Assembly: GCA_951406725.2 (NCBI GenBank)
Contig: OX597819.1
Span: forward strand, 93,330,001 to 93,392,000
Direction of reading: 5' to 3'
DNA length: 62,000 bases
DNA from: Octopus vulgaris
Lineage: Eukaryota
Shown here: piece by piece, positions 2,937 to 43,949 of the stretch
How the letters are laid out: each line of letters starts with the position of its first letter
Numbering within the stretch: the first letter of the stretch is position 1
The notes under the pieces: model-generated
Database searches by the model: none
Told to the model about the DNA's origin: nothing
What the model saw: the letters and a program-made list of their open reading frames with translations, nothing else
Made by a program: the position numbers and the translations under genes

Positions 2937-3324
<388 letters not shown>

Positions 3325-6317: not shown

Positions 6318-6533
6318 TATTGGTTTCAAATTTTTGGTACAAGGGCAGCAAGATCGTGGAGGGTGTAAGCCGATTACATCGACCCCATTACTCGGCTGGT
6401 ACTTATTTTATCGACTCCGAAATGATAAAAGGCAAAGTCGACCTCGATGGAACTTGAACTCAGAACATAATGACGAACGAAATGCCGCTAAGCATTTTGT
6501 CCGTCATGTTAACGATCCTGCCAGCTCGCCGCC
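6318..6533 (-). mobile_element. Family B SINE (a similar copy lies at 22017-22235, minus strand)
   Basis: Ends CTGCCAGCTCGCCGCC and contains AAAGGCAAAGTCGACCTCG. Confidence 0.8.
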
Positions 6534-7182
6534 TTAAAATACGCCCTAATATTAAAGACTGTAAGATGTAATACAAGTGAGCGATTTGGTTGCTACTTCT
6601 AGCAAGTTTAGTGACAACAGTGAGGCTTCCCCTGTTTGAACATGTGTATGTACGGATGAATGAACATATCTAAAATTAATTGGGTAATATATGATGTAGT
6701 ATTTGGTGTCTGATGGAAATATGGTGGACGGTTACGACGAGTGGCAGTAATGACAAAGAGGACTGTCTTTATAATGATGAAGGATAGGAAGAGGGGAATG
6801 GGATGAAGGGAGTTATCTACGTAGGTAGAAATGGGTGGATCCAAGGATGTTCAAATTGTTAAATAGAAAACTTGGAGTGTAGACCGGTCGGTCGGACGAA
6901 CGGATGGATGAATGGATGGATGGAGGGACGGACGGATTTATGGATGGATGGACGAATATATGGATGAACAGACGGACGGACGGATCGATGGATGGATAAG
7001 ATGGTTGGCTAGACGAAAAGATAAACAAATGGATGAATAAATGAAATGATAGAGCGAAGAACGGACATAAATATGGATTGATGAATACATTCGGTTGTAG
7101 AATTAATGCATGTCTCTGCGTATGTAATTTTATTTGTGCGTGCGTATGTGTGCGCTGATACATACATACATTCATAAATACT

Positions 7183-7216
<34 letters not shown>

Positions 7217-7270
7217 CACATATCAATATGAATGTGTGTATTTATATATATATGTGTGTGTGTGTGTATG

Positions 7271-7309
<39 letters not shown>

Positions 7310-7382
7310 GAATGTATGTATACCACGTATATGTATACATAAGCATAGGTAGATAGAAAGATAGATAGATAGATAGATAGAC

Positions 7383-7489
<107 letters not shown>

Positions 7490-7587
7490 ATACAAATATG
7501 TGCCAATGCGTGTATACGCGTACTGGAGGAACTAACTGCGAGAGAGAGTGACAGACATAGAGAGGGAGAAAATGGCAGAGTGAGAGG

Positions 7588-7620
<33 letters not shown>

Positions 7621-7769
7621 GCAGACAGACAGAGAGGCAGACAGACAGAGAGGCAGAGAGAGAGAGAGAGAAGTGGTACGAGAGTGGAAAAGGCAAAATT
7701 AAATTGTATACGAGAATGTGTCTCGGCATACAAATGAGTGATTTTTACTGATAGCGTGCATCATGTATT

Positions 7770-7834
<65 letters not shown>

Positions 7835-8121
7835 GCATATATACATATATGTATGCATATATGAATATATGTGCGTATACATATGTGTATGTATACATAG
7901 ACATACATACACAAGTATATATATGACTGCAGATATGAATGATGAGGTAGAGGTAGCTGGATGTATTATTGTAAATGCAAAGAAGTACACGTATAATAAT
8001 CTTATCATTGCTTATATATTTAATTATTCCACGATGTATAAAGTGCTGATATTTTCCCTTAATTTTTCTATTTACCTTTGATACCTTCTTTTTAAATCAA
8101 ATATTTTGTCTCTGTATGAAT

Positions 8122-8595
8122 ATGTGGCTGTGTGGTAAGAAGTTTGCTTCCCAACCACATGGCTCCGGGTTCAGTCTCACAGCGTGGCACTTTGGGCAAG
8201 TGTATTCAACTATAGCCTCGGGCTGACCAAAACCTTGTGATTGAATTTGGTAGACGGAAACCGAAAGAAGCCTTTCGTATGTGTGTGTGTGTGTGTACGT
8301 GTGTGTGTGTGTGTGTGTGTGTGTACGTGTGTGTGTGTGTGCATGCGTGTATGTGAATATATTTGTGTGTGTCTCTTTGTATCTGTGTTTGTCTACCCAG
8401 CCCCATCACCGCTTGACAACCGGCGTTGGCGTATTTACGTCCCGTAGTTAGCGGTTCGGCAAAAGACACCGGTAGAATAAGTACTAGATTTACAAAGAAT
8501 AAGTTCTGGGGTCGATTTTGTGAACTATAACCCTTTAAGGCGGTGCCCTGCATGACCACAGTCAAATGACTGAAACAAGTAAAAGAATAAAGAAT
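8122..8595 (+). mobile_element. tRNA-derived CORE-like SINE with internal (GT)n (family A)
   Basis: GGCTGTGTGGTAAGAAG..GGTTCAGTC..GGCACTTTGGGCAAGTG..GACGGAAAC-(GT)n-..GCTTGACAACCG..AAGAATAAG..GACTGAAACAAGTAAAAGA. The same architecture recurs at 19148, 18240, 56420 and in partial copies. Confidence 0.85.
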
Positions 8596-9637
8596 ATATA
8601 TATATCTTTTATTTTGTTTTAGTCATTAGACTGCGGCCACGCTAGGGCACCGCGTTAAAGAATTTTAGTCGAACTAATCGACCCCAGAACTTATTCTTCG
8701 TATATATATATACGACGGAATTCTTTCAGAATCCGTTTGTCTGTCTGCCGTTATGAATGGCTGTAAGTATGGTTCTGATCATATATGATGTATGCATATT
8801 ACTTTGTTTATATACAATTATAATGGTTCATTTGTGAATGAGTGGTTGAGTGAGCTGCTTGATTTTTATGTGTTGAAGTTTGTGTCCGCGTCAATATTTA
8901 CGTGCAAGCGTACTAATTCGCCTAGCTCTCTACATACGTCTATACAGGTTGTGTATACGTGTGAGAGTACACCCACACACATGTTCTCTCTCTCTCTCTC
9001 TCTCACTCTCTCACTTTCTCTCTCACATCCTTCACTTTCTCTCTCTTTCTCTCTCTCTCTCCTATACATATACACATACACACATGTGCGCACACATACA
9101 AATACACGAAAGGCTATACAGTTAAGACGATCGCTTCTCAGTCACGCGGTTCCAGGTTCAACACTGCCTCTCGGCTATTTACAGACACGTGTGTGTATGT
9201 GTGTTTGTGTGTATATGTGTGCATAAGTGTATGGTGCGTGGTGTGTGTCTGTGTGGACGTTTGTGCATGTGCAATTGTTCATGTGTGTGGACAGCGGCAC
9301 ATCTTTGTGAACATAACAGCTAAGCTTATTCGTCGAGTTTCTGGATTGAAACATTTTATCGCCAAAATACTGAATTATGAAATAAGGCAAAAGTGTAAAT
9401 CAAAGTTTTCTTATATTTTTCATGATTTCATTTCTGCCGTGACTGTTTGAAATAAACCACTTAAGTTCTACTTCACAACGCTTCGCATGAAAGAAACTCT
9501 TTTGCATAGTATACATCCCACCAAATACACAAACATATATAAGTATTTTATGTATATACATAGGTATATATAAATATATGCATATACATATTCATATACA
9601 TACTCATACAAGCTCATATACATGATATATATATATA

Positions 9638-13455: not shown

Positions 13456-13889
13456 TGTATTCATGTATGTATGTGTATTGGTAAATATATATATGTGTGT
13501 GTGTGTGTGTGCGTGTATGTATATATCTTTGTATTTATATATATGTGCGTGTGTGTGAGAGAGATTGTGAATGTGTCTGTGTTTGTATATATACAATATA
13601 CTTTGCCCGTTTAACTGAGACACGTTTTTCACCATTTATTCTTCTTATCTGTAAAAGAGCGTAGGCGCGATAAGTTGAATAAACTCTCTTTGATATTCTT
13701 TCACACCCTTTTGCTTTTCGCATGTTTGAATCTATATATATTTATGCATACATATATGTATATGATCCAACCATGCCAAAAGCAAAATGAATGGTGTGAA
13801 AGAACATCAAAGTAAGGGTGTTAGTTCAACGTTTCGAGCCTACGCGCTTCTACAGAAAAAGAAAAAAACGTGTCTCAATATATATATGT

Positions 13890-14550
13890 AGAAAAAGACG
13901 GGATGTATTTCCACGCAGGAAAAAATGTTGGCAAATTTGTTGTTGAAAATGCACCTAAATTTGAAAAACCTGTAATTGTTATAAAATGAATTTATTTACA
14001 TATATACCAAACTAGTTTCAGCAATATTTTTTTTTATCAATGATAAAAGTTTAGAATTATGAATTAGAAAAGCATGTTTAACAGTCTCAATGTCGACAAG
14101 TTTAAATGTTCATAACAGTCAATAATATAAAGACTGCTGATTAACATATTTAAATGTATAAAATTCAAAAGCGTTAGTAGTGGTCGACAAGAAATAAATT
14201 TCATCAAAGTTTCAGTTATATTGAGTGAAGAGGGAGAAAAACGAGGGAGAAAAACAAGGGAGAAAGAGATTTGGTTTACAGTTTCTGTGATTCTCTTTCT
14301 GTTGTGTGCAGGAACTTTCGCTTGTACCGGATTCCGAAAAACACTCTTACAGGCGAAAGTTGTTTTTTCTAATTCATAATTCTAAATTTATACTATTGAT
14401 AAAGAAAAAATATTTTTGAAACTAGTCTAGTATTAATGTAAATAAATTTATTTTAAAACAATTACAAGTTTTTCAAGTTTAGGTGCATTTTCAACAACGA
14501 ATTTCCTTATATTTTTTCCTGCGTGGAAATACACCTCCTCTTTTGTTATA
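13890..14550. mobile_element. Fold-back element with ~185-bp inverted arms (about 13890-14075 / 14365-14550), each carrying a U3:A8 hammerhead-like motif
   Basis: GTATTTCCACGCAGGAAAAAA..GAAAATGCACCTAAA..ACTAGTTTC..TTAGAATTATGAATTAGAAAA is mirrored by TTTTCTAATTCATAATTCTAAA..GAAACTAGT..TTTAGGTGCATTTTC..TTTTTTCCTGCGTGGAAATAC. Confidence 0.85.
14391..14432 (+). ncRNA. Minimal hammerhead-like motif (U3:A8 core, GUC triplet)
   Basis: TACTA-TTGATAA-(weak A/T stem II)-GAA-ACTAGT-C-TAGTA: 5-bp stem I and palindromic ACTAGT. The mirror copy at 14005-14045 (-) reads TATCA-TTGATAA-..-GAA-ACTAGT-T-TGGTA. Confidence 0.5.
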
Positions 14551-14901
14551 TATATATATATATATATATATAAGACCAATCCGTCGGTTGCGACGACGAG
14601 GGTCCCAGCTGATACGATCAACGGAACAGCTTGCTCGTGAAATTAACGTGCAAGTGGCTGAGTACTCCACAAACACGTGTACTCTTAACGTAGTTCTCGG
14701 GGAGATTCAGCGTGACACAGAATGTGACAAAGCTGATCCTTTGAAATACATGTACTGCTCATTTTTGCCAGCTGAGTGAACTGGAGCAACGTGAAATAAA
14801 GGACACAACGCGCCGCCGGGGAATTGAACTCACGACCTTACGATCATGAAGAGAATGCCCCTAACTACTAAGCCAAGGGCCCTCACACACACACACGTGT
14901 A

Positions 14902-14955
<54 letters not shown>

Positions 14956-14979
14956 TGTATATATATATATATATATATA

Positions 14980-15072
<93 letters not shown>

Positions 15073-15117
15073 CAAGTCAAAATAGAAAATGCTAAAATAA
15101 TTTCATAAAGAACATCT

Positions 15118-15155
15118 CAGTACCAGTTTCGGTCATTTTGAGACCTTTTCAACTG
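15118..15155 (-). ncRNA. Mirror copy of the U3:A8 hammerhead motif
   Basis: The minus strand reads CAG-TTGAAAA-GGTC(TCAAAAT)GACC-GAA-ACTGGT-A-CTG. Confidence 0.6.
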
Positions 15156-15352
15156 TAACGATTAAATAATTAAATTTAGAAAAATTAGAAGAAAAATTTT
15201 TTTAAAGGAATATTTGTATAGTCTTCAAATATAAGTAGCATTCTGCCTTTCTCTGACTCCCTTGTTTGCACTTGTGTGTTCGAGGTCGTTGTGAATATTC
15301 CTTTAAAAAAACTTTTCTTCTAATTTTTCTAAATTTAATTATTTAATCGTTA

Positions 15353-15390
15353 CAGTTGAAAAGGTCTCGAAATGACCGAAACCGGTACTG
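15353..15390 (+). ncRNA. Minimal type-I hammerhead ribozyme motif, U3:A8 core variant
   Basis: CAG-TTGAAAA-GGTC(TCGAAAT)GACC-GAA-ACCGGT-A-CTG: stem I CAG/CTG, stem II GGTC/GACC, palindromic stem III ACCGGT and a GUA cleavage triplet. Confidence 0.65.
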
Positions 15391-15476
15391 AAATGTTCTT
15401 TATAAAATTATTTTAGCATTTTCTATTTTGACTTGTTTTTTCATATATATCAACTCGTGTGTTCCTTTTCACCCTT

Positions 15477-15537
<61 letters not shown>

Positions 15538-34613: not shown

Positions 34614-35404
34614 ACTGTGCTTCCCATTCTTTCACCCCTCTCTTTTCTTCTCTCCTAAGCGATGAATACACACTCCTTATTTCATAATAATTCATAACGA
34701 TATTTCTTTTGATATTCTCAAATATTTCATACTGATTTCCGTATGCCAGATTAGATCAATAATTATTTACTAAGGACCACCAAACACTTTCTCTCTCTCC
34801 TTCTATATCTCTTTACTCTCTTTCTCTTTTCCTCTTCAGTTGTAGCACACATTTAGGTATTGGTCATCTCATTACACTTTATGCTATTGCATTCTTTGAT
34901 ATCATATATTTTCAACACCTCATAACACTTCATATTCATTTTCATTTAGCACCTTTTAATCCTGACCCTCCCCTACACTTTTACCTTTCCTCCATTTCCC
35001 TTAATCCTATATTTTTAAGTACTTTACATTCAAACGTTTTTAAGCCTTAAACTTCACTGTATGGAACTACCTAATTAATATAACCCACTTCTAAAAATAT
35101 TTATACGTAACGATTGAAACTCTCCATAATTTTTCATTTCATTAAATGCAGCAATGATATTCTGTATAGCACGAATATTTTTCACGGATATGACAGAAAC
35201 TAGTTTAAATAAATTCGTTCGACGATTACTAGGCTTTACTAAGAATGAAACTTGCAGTTACGATATATTAACATTAATGGACTTTACCATTTCAAATATA
35301 CTTCACTGTGCAATATGTATTCAGGACTTTAATTACATTAGTAATAAACAACTACAACAGTCACTCATCACACACACATATATGTGTGGTGGTGGTGGGG
35401 GAGA

Positions 35405-35715
35405 AGTTGTTCTTGAGTTTGAAAATGCACCGAAATCTCAAAAAGTATAGTCGTTATTAAATTTCGACAACTTTTTTCTTATCAATGGTACAAATAAATG
35501 AAATAAAGTGTTTAGGAGAGTTTAAAGTTACAGGGTAATTCTATTTATTTATTTGTACCATTAGTAAAAAAAAAATGTTGAAACCGGTTTGGTTATTTGA
35601 TTAAATCTATTACAAAATTTTAAAATGACTACACGTTTTCAGATTCAGGTGTATTTTCAAACCTCAAAACAAATTCTTCTATATTTTCTCCTGCGCTGGA
35701 ATACACTTCTCTCCA
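35405..35715. mobile_element. Decayed fold-back element related to the 13.9-14.55 kb element
   Basis: GAAAATGCACCGAAATCT / AGATTCAGGTGTATTTTC and TCAATGGTACAAATAAAT / ATTTATTTGTACCATTAG are inverted. A degenerate hammerhead ACCA-TTAGTAA-..-GAA-ACCGGT-T-TGGT lies at 35557-35593. Confidence 0.6.
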
Positions 35716-38721: not shown

Positions 38722-39174
38722 ATATTCATACATACATACATATGTCTGTGTGCATGCGTATGTATGTATACTTACATAAATATATACATGTTCATAAATA
38801 TAAAAATGCATGTTTACATATATATACATATATATATAAATACACACTCACACACGCGTATACATATACATATGTGTATAAAAATTGTTATGAATCAAAA
38901 AAGTGCAGGAATAAAAGAAATGAAATTGAAAATGCACAAAGAATATATTAAAATTAATTAGAATTTAATTATATTTTTAAATTATGAAATATAGAAATAC
39001 ACGTCACCGGTTTCACATTAGATTTTCAAAAGTATCTAGTAGATGGAACTGTGACACGAATTATATATACTCTCAGTCCATTTCAACTTCATTTCTGATA
39101 TGTATATACATCAATGTAACCACACACTTACTGTTGGCGATTTCTTTTTCTTCTTTGGACTTTTCCTTTTCTCT

Positions 39175-39207
39175 TTTCTGACGAAAAGCTTTGCTCGAAA
39201 CGTCAAA
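39175..39207 (+). ncRNA. Minimal hammerhead-like motif (ACGT palindrome, GUC triplet)
   Basis: TTT-CTGACGA-A-AAGC(TTT)GCTC-GAA-ACGT-C-AAA. The stem II closing pair is mismatched relative to the 43424 copy. Confidence 0.45.
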
Positions 39208-41837: not shown

Positions 41838-43423
41838 CAATCTTGATCAACTTTCTTCTAGTACATGTTGGTGTTCATCAGTTTTTTTGCCGTTCCTCTC
41901 TTGTTCACAGCCAAAATATTAAGTTTAGTGCTGAGATTTTCTAGCAAGAGTCAGCTGGTTTAATACAAATTTCCATCTCGTACTTGCATATTGTACATAC
42001 ATCTCATTATACACGCTGGGTTTCGTTTTGCTTGTTATATCTATTTTCTTTTTGTTTGTTTTTTTTAATGGTGTCGTGCTATGCTATTAAGCGCAGATCC
42101 AGAAACCTCCATACCTCGTTAGTGCTTTCAAGTTTTATTTCCATCCGTATTTGTTTTCTATTTATGTTTTGTAAAGCACTCCAATTTTACCAACATAATT
42201 AGTTTACGATATAATTGAAAAACAACTTATGCGCGATCGCGTTAACTGCTAGAAGTAGCGAGCAAATCTGCTATAAATTAAAGGTACTGCTTTATAAAAG
42301 ATACGTTACATTATATAGTTCTAGAGTCACAATACCGAAAAAATTACAGGACAGTTGCGGTCGGATTGTCTTTGATCAGAGCTCAGTTTGATTGATCAAG
42401 ACTGACCTGAAACTGAACAACAACACCAGCAAGAGCAACAGCTGGAGGCGCAATGGCCCAGTGGTAAGGGCAGCGGACTCGCGGTCGGAGGATCGCGGTT
42501 TCGATTCCCAGACGTGTGTGTTTATTGAGCGAAAACACCTTAAGCTCCACGAGGCTCCGGAAGGGGTGGTGGCGACCCCTGTTGTACTCTTTCGCTCCAA
42601 CTTTCTCTCACTTTTTCTTCCTGTTTCTTCCTGTTTCTTGTCTGGGGTTGACCTGCTTTCTCTTCTGGGGGTCTTACGAATAGCAAAAGACCACGTTTTG
42701 GACTTCTACCATTAGGGACGAAGACCGCTTCGCTCAACAAACAAACAAGCAGCAGCAACACATTAATTCCTTTATGCATTGGTTCCCGTTCAAGTTTGAA
42801 CGACGTCGACATTCATCTTTCGTTATGGCAGGGTTTAGATCATTTAAATGCGTGCCAACCAGTAACTAGGCTTTAGTTACACCTTAAACGTTGGAATAGC
42901 TGAGTGGTTAAGAAGCTCATTTTTCAACCATGCGGTTTCAGGTTCAGTCCTGCTGAGTAAATTTTTGGATAAAAGTTTTTGCTGTAGCCCCTGACCGGAC
43001 AGTGTCTTGTGAGTGAATTTGGTTAACGGAAACTGGTTTACGAAGACCATCTTGTGCATATATATTTATATGTATATATGTGTGTGTCTATCTGTCTTTG
43101 TGTTTGTTTGCCAATGCCCCAGCACCACTTGACAACTGCTGTTGGTTTGTTTACGTCCACGCATGAAACCGACTGATGCAATAAGTACCAGGCTCAAAAT
43201 AGGGTAACTCATCCCACCACCCTGCTCCCTCGCACTGTTGTCACTATACCCCCCAATCGCCCCCTCTCCACTGCCGAGCGCTCTCTCCTCAGTAGGGGAC
43301 TCCGCTTCACGCCTCTCACGCGTCACTGCGACGAATTTGAAGCTTTCAAAATGTGACCGCGTGTGTACCGTTGGCAATTTTTTTTCCTCCGTCTTCCCTT
43401 CTCTGGATCTTCCCTTTTCCTAT

Positions 43424-43458
43424 GTTTCTGACGAAGAGCTCCGCTCGAAACGTAAAAC
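43424..43458 (+). ncRNA. Minimal hammerhead-like motif (ACGT palindrome, GUA triplet) in a PLE-type terminal remnant
   Basis: GTTT-CTGACGA-A-GAGC(TCC)GCTC-GAA-ACGT-A-AAAC, with 4-bp stem I and stem II. A PLE-like tail follows and ends in (TA)n at ~43560. Confidence 0.6.
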
Positions 43459-43949
43459 CCTCCTTCTTCCCTTCCTGAGCGTCCAGTAATACTATATTTG
43501 TTCCACGTCCTCGCGTTGTGTTTTCTCTTGGTGTTTTCATGTTTGGATTAACTTTATATATATATATATATATATAAATATATATACGTATATACGTATG
43601 TGTGTGTATATATATATATATAAACATGTATGTATTTGTGTGTGTGTGTGTGGGAAGGCGCATGGCTTAGTGGTTAGGGGGGTTGCACTGACATTTGCGA
43701 GATTGTGGATTTGATTTCCAGACTAGGTGTTGCGTTATATTCTTGCGCAAAGTACTTCCTTTCACGTTGCTCTGCGATCATTTCGTCATCTGACACGTGG
43801 CACACAGTGCACCTGTACAGGTAATGTTGATTTGGTGGAGGGTGTGAGCTTATGTGTACACAAACATTTGATCTTGATAAACAAAAAATCTGTGTGGTTC
43901 TTTAGTAAGACATTCTTCAACCCTCATACATCGTCTAACGACGGGAGAG

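What the first reader, a model, noticed from the sequence alone, without database searches (positions are those of the whole stretch)
13890..15441. Fold-back elements whose two arms each carry a U3:A8 covariant minimal hammerhead ribozyme
Seen: two separate long inverted-repeat elements (13890-14550; 15067-15441), plus a decayed relative at 35.4-35.7 kb, have a complete type-I hammerhead layout in each arm. At 15353 this reads CAG-UUGAAAA-GGUC/GACC-GAA-ACCGGU-A-CUG; at 14391, UACUA-UUGAUAA-stem-GAA-ACUAGU-C-UAGUA. The usual CUGANGA core is replaced by UUGANAA in all four arms, so C3 and G8 changed together to U3 and A8. Known: C3-G8 is a Watson-Crick tertiary pair whose compensatory swap can retain activity, and Penelope-like elements carry minimal hammerheads with palindromic stem III that act as dimers. 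Inference: these MITE-looking elements are tail-to-tail PLE terminal repeats of families using a non-canonical core, which standard CUGANGA searches would miss. They may be a non-autonomous, ribozyme-processed mobile family.
Basis: partly seen in the sequence, partly recalled or inferred. Interest (0 to 1): 0.8.

Follow-up and report, generated by a model that had tools for sequence, protein, structure and literature searches.

The report
Inverted Penelope-element tails with variant hammerheads
The two fold-back repeats are pairs of truncated tail ends of Penelope-like retrotransposons inserted back to back, each carrying a small hammerhead ribozyme motif with a swapped core base pair (U3:A8); both features were published in 2014, so this is a real but ordinary example in a new genome.

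Summary
Both inverted repeats exist (148 nt at 97%; 158 nt at 86%). A strict minimal-hammerhead descriptor hits the window 3 times against 0 in 200 shuffles.

The arms are not MITE ends. They are the 3' ends of two Penelope-like element (PLE) families whose full copies encode a reverse transcriptase plus a GIY-YIG endonuclease. The motif lies in sense with that ORF, 54-118 nt before the element's 3' end.

Each fold-back is an independent head-to-head pair of 5'-truncated copies with the 3' ends pointing outward. They sit in (TA)n and have a one-sided ~40-nt tail, which is the published PLE insertion architecture.

Across 11 PLE families the three helices and the 3:8 pair covary: 85.9% of cells paired against 60.8% shuffled, and N3:N8 = UA x5, CG x4, AU x1.

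In this genome, UUGANAA...GAAACCGGU occurs 9,053 times and the canonical CUGANGA version 186 times.

Cervera & de la Peña 2014 already described U3-A8 minimal hammerheads in PLEs, and motif pairs on opposite strands. So this is a new member of a known kind. Cleavage is untested. The fold-backs themselves look like dead insertion by-products, not a ribozyme-processed mobile family.

The parts
13890..14330 (-). Element 1, left copy: 5'-truncated 3' end (~440 nt) of PLE family B. Its 3' end is at 13890, abutting (TA)n.
   Evidence: Many genomic copies match positions 4-441 of the 661-nt query. Parent loci L033, L037, L049, L053 and L050 carry PLE ORF fragments (30-54% identical to P0002) on the strand that makes this copy sense.
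14005..14045 (-). Degraded U3:A8 minimal hammerhead: UAUCA-UUGAUAA-AAAAAAAAUAUUGCU-GAA-ACUAGU-U-UGGUA.
   Evidence: Read. The core, GAA, the palindrome and stem I are kept; stem II is weakened relative to the family majority ACAAAAAAUAUUGUU.
14364..14550 (+). Element 1, right copy: shorter 5'-truncated 3' end of the same PLE family, ending in the ~35-nt terminal extension ...UUUUUUCCUGCGUGGAAAUACACC.CCUCUUUUG and then (TA)n.
   Evidence: Query positions 475-661 match the opposite strand of the same loci; alignment of 36 copies.
14390..14433 (+). U3:A8 minimal type-I hammerhead motif: AUACUA-UUGAUAA-AGAAAAAAUAUUUUU-GAA-ACUAGU-C-UAGUAU. Predicted cleavage is after C at 14427.
   Evidence: Strict descriptor hit.
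15067..15296 (-). Element 2, left copy: 230-nt 5'-truncated 3' end of PLE family A.
   Evidence: Many genomic copies match 1-230 at 97% and continue into a longer element with an RT/EN ORF.
15118..15155 (-). U3:A8 hammerhead motif: CAG-UUGAAAA-GGUCUCAAAAUGACC-GAA-ACUGGU-A-CUG, with one G.U in helix III.
   Evidence: Hammerhead_HH9 15.4 bits at 15087-15166 (-).
15294..15441 (+). Element 2, right copy: 148-nt 5'-truncated 3' end of PLE family A.
   Evidence: It is co-linear and on the same strand as the 3' UTR of the 774-aa ORF in L061 (9361-9508 against ORF 6320-8641).
15353..15390 (+). U3:A8 minimal type-I hammerhead motif: CAG-UUGAAAA-GGUC-UCGAAAU-GACC-GAA-ACCGGU-A-CUG. Predicted cleavage is after A at 15387, 54 nt before the element's 3' end.
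   Evidence: Strict descriptor hit; HH9 17.7 bits. The homodimer MFE forms stem II in each monomer plus an intermolecular ACCGGU helix III.
15442..15481 (+). One-sided ~40-nt tail extension CAUAUAUAUCAACUCGUGUGUUCCUUUUCACCCUUAUACA, present only at this end of the pair and followed by (TA)n.
   Evidence: The start of the same extension (CATATATATCAA) lies at only one end of each of the 15 fold-back copies, either left or right, and the longer version is seen in L059. [quoted passage not shown]
35402..35677 (.). Decayed inverted pair related by eye to family B. The right arm reads UACCA-UUAGUAA-...-GAA-ACCGGU-U-UGGU (G5->A); the left arm keeps UUGAUAA but has lost helix III.
14900..15066 (.). 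(TA)n / (CA)n microsatellite that served as the insertion target. (TA)n also lies at 13878-13888, 14546-14575 and 15482-15536.
   Evidence: (TA)n targeting by PLEs with the CX2-5CxxC linker is described in PMC8557442.

Best explanation
Each fold-back is the product of one insertion event of a Penelope-like retrotransposon (PLE) into a (TA)n microsatellite. The event left two 5'-truncated copies of the element's 3' end in inverted, head-to-head orientation, with the 3' ends outward and a short extension at one side only.

The two elements come from two PLE families of this genome, about 45-50% identical in protein. [quoted passage not shown]

The hammerhead-like motif is a constitutive part of the PLE 3' region (pseudo-LTR). 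It lies in sense with the ORF. It is a minimal type-I hammerhead whose helix III is a 6-nt palindrome (ACCGGU or ACUAGU), and in these lineages the C3-G8 tertiary pair has been replaced by U3:A8.

Inferred from the published model, not shown here: in transcripts of tandem or partly tandem PLE copies, or between two RNAs, two motifs pair through the palindrome into an extended helix III and cleave after H17 (GUA/GUC), trimming the RNA to unit length.

In the truncated inverted pairs of this window the motifs are passengers. They are on opposite strands, cannot dimerise in cis, and are buried in a long hairpin if transcribed through. So the fold-backs are dead-on-arrival by-products, not a mobile family of their own.
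For: PLE identity:
- L059 holds a 2.6-kb copy whose inverted ends are those of element 2 and which has an RT-Cterm/CCHH/GIY-YIG frame.
- L061 has a 774-aa open frame with RVT_1 (6e-8) and GIY-YIG (1.7e-4).
- The EN domain has 18,812 first-look candidates in the genome. The 150 scored were 93-100% identical, and many lie in 784-aa open frames.
- Element 1's parents carry a different PLE ORF, 30-54% identical.

Orientation and architecture:
- The motif is in sense with the ORF.
- The inner junctions differ among 15 fold-backs, the tail is one-sided, and the flanks are (TA)n.
- 13 of 13 close motif pairs are ordered (-,+). Paired EN hits also run (-,+), and same-strand EN hits lie about 4.4 kb apart, suggesting tandem copies.

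Real hammerhead:
- 3 descriptor hits against 0 in 200 shuffles.
- Homologous PLEs from other assemblies carry the motif at the same place, with canonical, U3:A8 or A3:U8 cores, and twice per locus about 3.9-4.4 kb apart in L063 and L070.
- Over 11 families, 85.9% of cells are paired against 60.8% shuffled (0/500) and 33-46% for slid partners. 11 of 13 pairs change on both sides. N3:N8 = UA 5, CG 4, AU 1.
- Genome counts: U3:A8 9,053 (control 64), C3:G8 186, C3:A8 279, U3:G8 183. There are 1,286 more with helix III ACUAGU. Many different complementary stem II sequences occur: GGUC/GACC, AGUC/GACU, GAGA/UCUC, GAGG/CCUC, GAUG/CAUC, CAGU/ACUG.
- The same stem II (GAGG..CCUC) occurs with both CUGACGA and UUGAUAA cores.
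- The dimer fold forms an intermolecular helix III.

Literature: PMC4209133, PMC8557442, PMC6765202.
Against: - No cleavage data exist for any of these sequences. Published PLE minimal hammerheads cleave only weakly in vitro, even as dimers (PMC4209133).
- Stem I of element 2 is only 3 bp.
- Stem II of family B needs a bulged nucleotide, or else pairing of A9, to form.
- I could not show an upstream pseudo-LTR copy of the motif for the full-length element in L061.
- The clade assignment (Neptune-like) rests on motifs read by eye, not on a phylogeny.
- The 11 representatives were chosen by me from motif-filtered lists. For the octopus-side single copies there is some selection bias.
Confidence: 0.85

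Rival explanations
1. The conserved hammerhead-shaped motif is kept not for self-cleavage but as a structured 3' recognition or priming element for the PLE reverse transcriptase/endonuclease. Its resemblance to an active ribozyme would then be vestigial in the U3:A8 lineages.
For: The motif sits at a fixed short distance (54-118 nt) from the 3' end, where target-primed reverse transcription would start. PLE minimal hammerheads cleave poorly in vitro (PMC4209133). Naiad PLEs proliferate without canonical hammerheads (PMC8557442).
Against: The invariant positions are exactly the catalytic ones: U4 G5 A6, A9, G12 A13 A14 and A15.1-U16.1. H17 is never G. The 3:8 tertiary pair covaries as Watson-Crick. 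The mixed cores C3:A8 and U3:G8 occur mostly as scattered mutated copies rather than as large families. A mere protein-binding hairpin would not be expected to preserve these features.
Confidence: 0.1
2. The fold-backs are MITEs: non-autonomous DNA transposons of the Tc1/mariner or Stowaway kind with long terminal inverted repeats and a TA target-site duplication. The hammerhead resemblance would be a chance feature of AT-rich TIRs.
For: Long near-perfect inverted repeats, small size (375 and 661 bp), flanking TA, and thousands of related copies.
Against: The arms are co-linear with the 3' UTR of an RT + GIY-YIG ORF. tblastn with the PLE protein finds nothing in the window, so the copies there are non-coding. 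Inner junctions and arm lengths differ from copy to copy. One end carries an asymmetric ~40-nt tail. The flanks are long (TA)n tracts, not a 2-bp duplication. The motif covaries across families and species.
Confidence: 0.02
3. The fold-backs, or short tail fragments like them, are an autonomous class of ribozyme-processed, circular-RNA-forming non-autonomous elements (animal retrozyme-like) mobilised in trans by the PLE machinery.
For: Animal non-LTR retrozymes are proposed to derive from PLE pseudo-LTRs (bioRxiv 10.64898/2026.07.22.740005). This genome has ~359-bp tandem arrays with a canonical hammerhead and the same GAAACCGGU box.
Against: The window's elements are inverted, not direct tandem, repeats. 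Each has a unique junction. A transcript through them carries only one sense motif and folds into a long hairpin.
Confidence: 0.03

Closest known systems
Minimal hammerhead ribozymes of Penelope-like elements, including the U3-A8 core variant (Cervera & de la Peña 2014, Mol Biol Evol, PMC4209133; Lünse, Weinberg & Breaker 2017, RNA Biol, known to me only through citation in PMC6765202)
   Same: Type-I layout. Short palindromic helix III, implying action as a dimer. Location in the PLE terminal repeat. Extreme sequence variability with compensatory changes. U3-A8 in place of C3-G8 (about 1,300 hits in Schistosoma mansoni). Motif pairs 100-700 bp apart on opposite strands.
   Different: A different host genome: 2.8 Gb, which I take to be a cephalopod by inference only. 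Here the U3:A8 form is not a minority variant but outnumbers the canonical core about 50:1 for the ACCGGU class (9,053 against 186). The G10.1-C11.1 pair that the 2014 paper calls highly conserved is replaced in several families here by A-U, or by a U...U flank.
Penelope-like elements with C-terminal GIY-YIG endonuclease and CX2-5CxxC linker (Neptune/Nematis type; Arkhipova 2006; Craig et al. 2021, PMC8557442)
   Same: RT + C-terminal GIY-YIG with CX4CXXC and CCHH. Heavy 5' truncation. Inverted 5'-truncated partner copy forming inverted repeats. One-sided 30-40-bp tail. Insertion into (TA)n. Hammerhead in the terminal repeat.
   Different: No phylogenetic placement was done. The window itself holds only non-coding tail fragments.
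Animal non-LTR retrozymes (tandem ~170-400-nt repeats with type-I hammerheads that give circular RNAs)
   Same: The same kind of hammerhead, and a probable PLE origin. This genome also has ~359-bp tandem arrays with CUGACGA...GAAACCGGU.
   Different: The window's elements are inverted pairs of unequal arms, not direct tandem repeats.
MITEs / fold-back DNA transposons
   Same: Small size, long inverted arms, TA-rich insertion sites.
   Different: The arms are retrotransposon 3' ends. The junctions are variable, the tail is asymmetric, and there is no fixed TSD.

Membership tests
Hammerhead ribozyme (type I, minimal/dimeric) | Conserved core nucleotides U4 G5 A6, A9, G12 A13 A14, the A15.1-U16.1 pair, and H17 not G | tested here: met
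   All are present at 15353-15390, 15118-15155, 14390-14433 and 14005-14045. These columns are invariant in the 11-family alignment A2.
Hammerhead ribozyme (type I, minimal/dimeric) | Position 3 and position 8 form a Watson-Crick tertiary pair (C3-G8, or a covariant) | tested here: met
   U3:A8 in all four arms. Across families UA x5, CG x4, AU x1, other x1. Genome counts: 9,053 U:A and 186 C:G, against 279 C:A and 183 U:G.
Hammerhead ribozyme (type I, minimal/dimeric) | Helices I, II and III supported by compensatory changes | tested here: met
   85.9% of cells paired against 60.8 +/- 2.9 shuffled (0/500). 11 of 13 pairs change on both sides. Slid-partner controls give 33-46%.
Hammerhead ribozyme (type I, minimal/dimeric) | Reaches the curated score of an Rfam hammerhead model | tested here: not met
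   No hit at gathering score. Hammerhead_HH9 scores 17.7 and 15.4 bits against a gathering score of 52. This is expected for minimal PLE motifs that lack loop-loop contacts and a closed helix III.
Hammerhead ribozyme (type I, minimal/dimeric) | Site-specific self-cleavage after H17 | not testable with these tools
   Needs in vitro transcription or RNA-end mapping. The thermodynamic dimer fold is compatible.
Penelope-like element (EN+) | Single ORF with a PLE-type RT and a GIY-YIG endonuclease | tested here: met
   Met in the parent copies: P0002 has RVT_1 6e-8 and GIY-YIG 1.7e-4 (22.3 bits, just below Pfam's cut-off of 22.6). Its homologues carry precomputed RVT_1 / GIY-YIG / DUF8422 / HTH_animal hits. 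The window copies themselves are non-coding fragments: tblastn finds nothing in the window.
Penelope-like element (EN+) | 5'-truncated copies in tandem and/or inverted arrangement (pseudo-LTRs), with a one-sided 30-40-bp tail | tested here: met
   Variable junctions and a one-sided CATATATATCAA... tail. (-,+) order in 13 of 13 pairs. Motif repeated about 3.9-4.4 kb apart in L063 and L070.
Penelope-like element (EN+) | Hammerhead motif in the terminal repeat, in sense with the ORF | tested here: met
Penelope-like element, Neptune clade | CX2-5CxxC linker upstream of GIY-YIG, the CCHH motif, and placement in an RT phylogeny | tested here: inconclusive
   CGRPNCGIC (CX4CXXC) and C..C...H...H were read directly in P0002. 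No reference PLE sequences were available for a tree.
MITE / DDE DNA transposon | Uniform internal sequence between the TIRs, a fixed-length TSD, and termini matching a transposase-encoding element | tested here: not met
   Junctions differ between copies. The flanks are (TA)n tracts. The termini match the 3' UTR of an RT/EN element.
Non-LTR retrozyme | Direct tandem repeats of a short unit, each with a hammerhead in the same orientation | tested here: not met
   The window's elements are inverted pairs. Tandem ~359-bp arrays exist elsewhere in the genome.

The most novel reading that the evidence does not exclude
In this genome a whole, recently active PLE lineage with more than 10,000 motif copies uses U3:A8 rather than C3:G8 as its working hammerhead core, and the canonical core is confined to a minor tandem-repeat family. 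If these motifs cleave in vivo, a catalytic-core tertiary pair has been swapped and fixed across many TE families. Model- or descriptor-based ribozyme annotation that demands CUGANGA would then miss about 98% of the hammerheads in such genomes.
Probability: 0.4. Interest if true: 0.45.

Novelty: new member of a known kind. Interest (0 to 1): 0.3.

Why it matters
It gives a clean natural example of covariation at the C3-G8 tertiary pair of the hammerhead core: U:A, C:G and A:U on otherwise homologous motifs. It shows that in at least one large invertebrate genome the variant core is the majority form.

In practice, short fold-back repeats in (TA)n tracts of such genomes should be annotated as twin-truncated PLE insertions rather than as MITEs. 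Ribozyme censuses based on Rfam thresholds or CUGANGA descriptors will undercount heavily.

It does not reveal a new mechanism. Both the variant core and the inverted architecture are already in the literature.

Tried and rejected
- Rfam at gathering thresholds found nothing in the window. E-value mode gave mostly microsatellite-driven miRNA false positives plus the two weak HH9 hits.
- Pfam on the truncated ORF P0001 was nearly blank. The full copy P0002 was needed.
- Two whole-genome searches with the long protein failed on the server. I therefore could not fetch the ~4.4-kb tandem units or more family representatives from this genome.
- The A3:U8 pattern search in this genome was not enriched over its control (349 against 309). 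A3:U8 is therefore supported only by one foreign family (L063).
- L071 showed no motif with my filter.
- L064 fits only if an extra A is allowed after C3, so I left it out of the covariation alignment.
- The window's canonical motif at 43424 (helix III ACGU) misaligned in MAFFT and was dropped from A2.
- Lünse et al. 2017 is not held in the library.
- ARAGORN finds no tRNA gene in the window, so the tRNA-like look of the repeat at 14566-14886 is my reading only.
- The MITE reading and the amplified-fold-back-family reading were considered and rejected on the junction evidence.
Full report
**What is in the sequence.**
The window is AT-rich, microsatellite-rich eukaryotic DNA: G000 contig C6, in a 2.8-Gb genome of 227 contigs. 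I take it to be a cephalopod, but that is inference only.

Both inverted repeats are real. The arms are 15067-15214 / 15294-15441 (148 nt, 97% complementary, 79-nt spacer) and 13878-14035 / 14402-14559 (158 nt, 86%). A third, decayed pair lies at 35402-35677. All sit inside (TA)n tracts.

A strict minimal-hammerhead descriptor requires stem I, YUGANRA with a Watson-Crick 3:8 pair, stem II, GAA, a perfect palindromic helix III, H17, and the return strand of stem I. It hits the window three times: 14390-14433 and 15353-15390 (both U3:A8), and a canonical motif at 43424-43458. It gave no hit in 200 dinucleotide-preserving shuffles.

The opposite arms carry the motif on the minus strand. 15118-15155 has one G.U in helix III. 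14005-14045 has a weakened stem II.

Rfam reports nothing at its curated thresholds. There are only sub-threshold Hammerhead_HH9 matches on the two arms of the second element.

**What the arms are.**
The 375-bp element has thousands of relatives in its own genome. Many match only its first 230 nt at 97% and continue into longer elements.
- L059 holds a 2.6-kb copy bounded by the same inverted ends. It has an open frame ending in a CX4CXXC motif and a GIY-YIG domain.
- L061 holds a 774-aa open frame with RVT_1 (6e-8) and GIY-YIG (1.7e-4).
- The endonuclease domain alone has 18,812 first-look candidates in the genome. The 150 scored were 93-100% identical, and many lie in 784-aa open frames. This is a young, very abundant Penelope-like element (PLE).
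- The 661-bp element derives from a second PLE family. Loci that share its left 440 nt carry ORF fragments 30-54% identical to the first family.

In both families the hammerhead motif lies in sense with the ORF. In the two parent loci checked (L061, L033) it is roughly 800 nt downstream of the stop codon, and in the window copies it lies 54-118 nt before the element's 3' end. tblastn with the PLE protein finds nothing in the window itself, so the window contains only non-coding tail fragments.

**Architecture of the fold-backs.**
In each pair the left copy is antisense and the right copy is sense. The 5'-truncated heads therefore abut in the middle and the 3' ends point outward. This is head-to-head, not tail-to-tail.

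Fifteen fold-backs of the first family were aligned in full. Their inner junctions and arm lengths differ, so they are independent events and not copies of one amplified unit.

One end, and only one, carries an extension beginning CATATATATCAA. In the window this is 15442-15481.

Among the first 100 genomic motif hits, 13 pairs lie within 5.1 kb of each other. All 13 are ordered minus then plus. Paired endonuclease hits show the same order, and same-strand endonuclease hits about 4.4 kb apart also occur, suggesting tandem copies.

This is the published PLE insertion structure: heavy 5' truncation, an inverted 5'-truncated partner forming inverted repeats, a 30-40-bp tail at one end, and a bias for (TA)n in clades with the CX2-5CxxC linker (PMC8557442).

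**Is the motif a real hammerhead?**
Homologous PLEs (44-57% protein identity) from unrelated public assemblies carry a motif at the same place. The non-canonical cores among them are:

| Locus | Core | Stem I |
|---|---|---|
| L067/L068 | UUGAAAA (U3:A8) | CUUC/GAAG |
| L063, upstream copy | AUGAAUA (A3:U8) | UUCC/GGAA |

L065/66, L069, L070 and L072 all have the canonical CUGAYGA core.

L063 and L070 show the motif twice, 3.9-4.4 kb apart, as expected for pseudo-LTRs.

On a MAFFT alignment of 11 family representatives (A2) I counted pairs for the hammerhead structure, including the 3:8 tertiary pair and the palindromic helix III:
- 85.9% of cells are paired, against 60.8 +/- 2.9% in shuffles (0 of 500 reach it).
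- The covariation score is 0.607 against 0.167 (0 of 500).
- 11 of 13 pairs change on both sides.
- Partners slid by 1-3 columns give only 33-46% pairing.
- The 3:8 pair is UA x5, CG x4, AU x1, with one mismatch.

Exact pattern counts over the whole genome:

| Core + N10-20 + box | 3:8 pair | Matches | Reversed-pattern control |
|---|---|---|---|
| UUGANAA ... GAAACCGGU | U:A | 9,053 | 64 |
| CUGANGA ... GAAACCGGU | C:G | 186 | 25 |
| CUGANAA ... GAAACCGGU | C:A | 279 | 42 |
| UUGANGA ... GAAACCGGU | U:G | 183 | 29 |
| UUGANAA ... GAAACUAGU | U:A | 1,286 | 158 |

The mixed-core hits are mostly scattered single mutated copies of U3:A8 families.

The U3:A8 hits fall into many families with different but complementary stem II sequences: GGUC/GACC, AGUC/GACU, GAGA/UCUC, GAGG/CCUC, GAUG/CAUC, CAGU/ACUG. 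One stem II (GAGG...CCUC) occurs with both CUGACGA and UUGAUAA cores.

Because copies of a transposon decay neutrally, it is this between-family pattern, not copy number, that argues for selection on the master elements.

**How it most likely works.**
Shown here:
- the motif is a conserved, covarying part of the PLE 3' region;
- its helix III is a 6-nt palindrome;
- two copies are predicted to pair through that palindrome while each keeps its own stem II.

Inferred from the literature (PMC4209133, PMC6765202): in transcripts of tandem or partly tandem PLEs, two motifs form an extended helix III and cleave after H17, trimming the RNA to unit length.

Not shown: any cleavage by these U3:A8 sequences. 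Published PLE minimal hammerheads are weak in vitro.

In the window's fold-backs the two motifs are on opposite strands, so one transcript has only one sense copy. A read-through RNA folds into a -214 kcal/mol hairpin that buries it. These particular elements are best seen as dead-on-arrival by-products of insertion.

**Comparison with what is known, and novelty.**
Cervera & de la Peña 2014 (PMC4209133) defined minimal hammerheads in PLE terminal repeats. They explicitly reported a U3-A8 in place of C3-G8 covariation, with about 1,300 hits in Schistosoma mansoni. They also noted dual motifs 100-700 bp apart on opposite strands.

So the central idea of the finding is correct but not new. What is specific here is the host genome, the roughly 50:1 dominance of U3:A8 over the canonical core for this helix III class, and the departures from the usual G10.1-C11.1 pair. 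I rate it a new member of a known kind.

**Caveats.**
- The clade label (Neptune-like) rests on motifs read in the protein, not on a tree.
- The representatives used were picked from lists filtered only on GAAA + palindrome + an upstream UGA. The choice among the octopus single copies was mine.
- A3:U8 is not enriched in this genome.

Noticed in passing
window 43345-43560 (+), motif at 43424-43458: A ~215-bp interspersed repeat that ends at a (TA)n tract and carries a canonical minimal hammerhead, GUUU-CUGACGA-AGAGCUCCGCUC-GAA-ACGU-A-AAAC, with a 4-nt palindromic helix III. Copies at 80-90% identity turned up in 6 of the loci fetched for other reasons (L003, L005, L035, L043, L055, L059). A weak partial copy lies at 39150-39207. 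It is probably the tail of a third PLE family or a SINE-like derivative.
   Followed up: partly
G000:C1:20002279-20004541 and similar places (C1:92886706-92887455, C2:144931920-144933592, C3:51540161-51541932): Tandem arrays with a ~359-bp period carrying the canonical motif CUGACGA-GAGGCAAUACCUC-GAA-ACCGGU. Several arrays switch strand once in the (-,+) order. They look like animal non-LTR retrozyme arrays and share stem II and helix III with U3:A8 PLE families.
   Followed up: no
window 14566-14886: The stretch between the two fold-backs is itself a composite interspersed repeat. Parts of it recur at 86-93% in L036, L040, L052, L060 and L061 and at window 3044-3084. By eye its minus strand starts with tRNA-like A and B boxes, which would make it SINE-like, but ARAGORN calls no tRNA anywhere in the window.
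   Followed up: partly
L059 709-1140 and 2575-2665; L061 3' UTR: The 3' UTR of PLE family A contains a long (GAA)n/(GAT)n microsatellite whose length varies between copies. This produces spurious poly-Arg, poly-Glu and poly-Lys open frames.
   Followed up: no
Proteins P0032, P0062, P0075, P0083, P0089, P0103: Close PLE homologues are deposited as proteins of bacterial gill symbionts of clams (Solemya velum symbiont, Candidatus Thiodiazotropha MAGs) on ~3-4-kb contigs. These are almost certainly host mollusc retrotransposon contigs mis-binned into symbiont genomes.
   Followed up: no
L064 3590-3650: One foreign PLE tail has CCAC-CAUGAAGA-...-GAA-ACCGGU-C-GUGG. Stem I is perfect only if an extra A is inserted between C3 and U4. 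This could be a core insertion variant or a mutated single copy.
   Followed up: no
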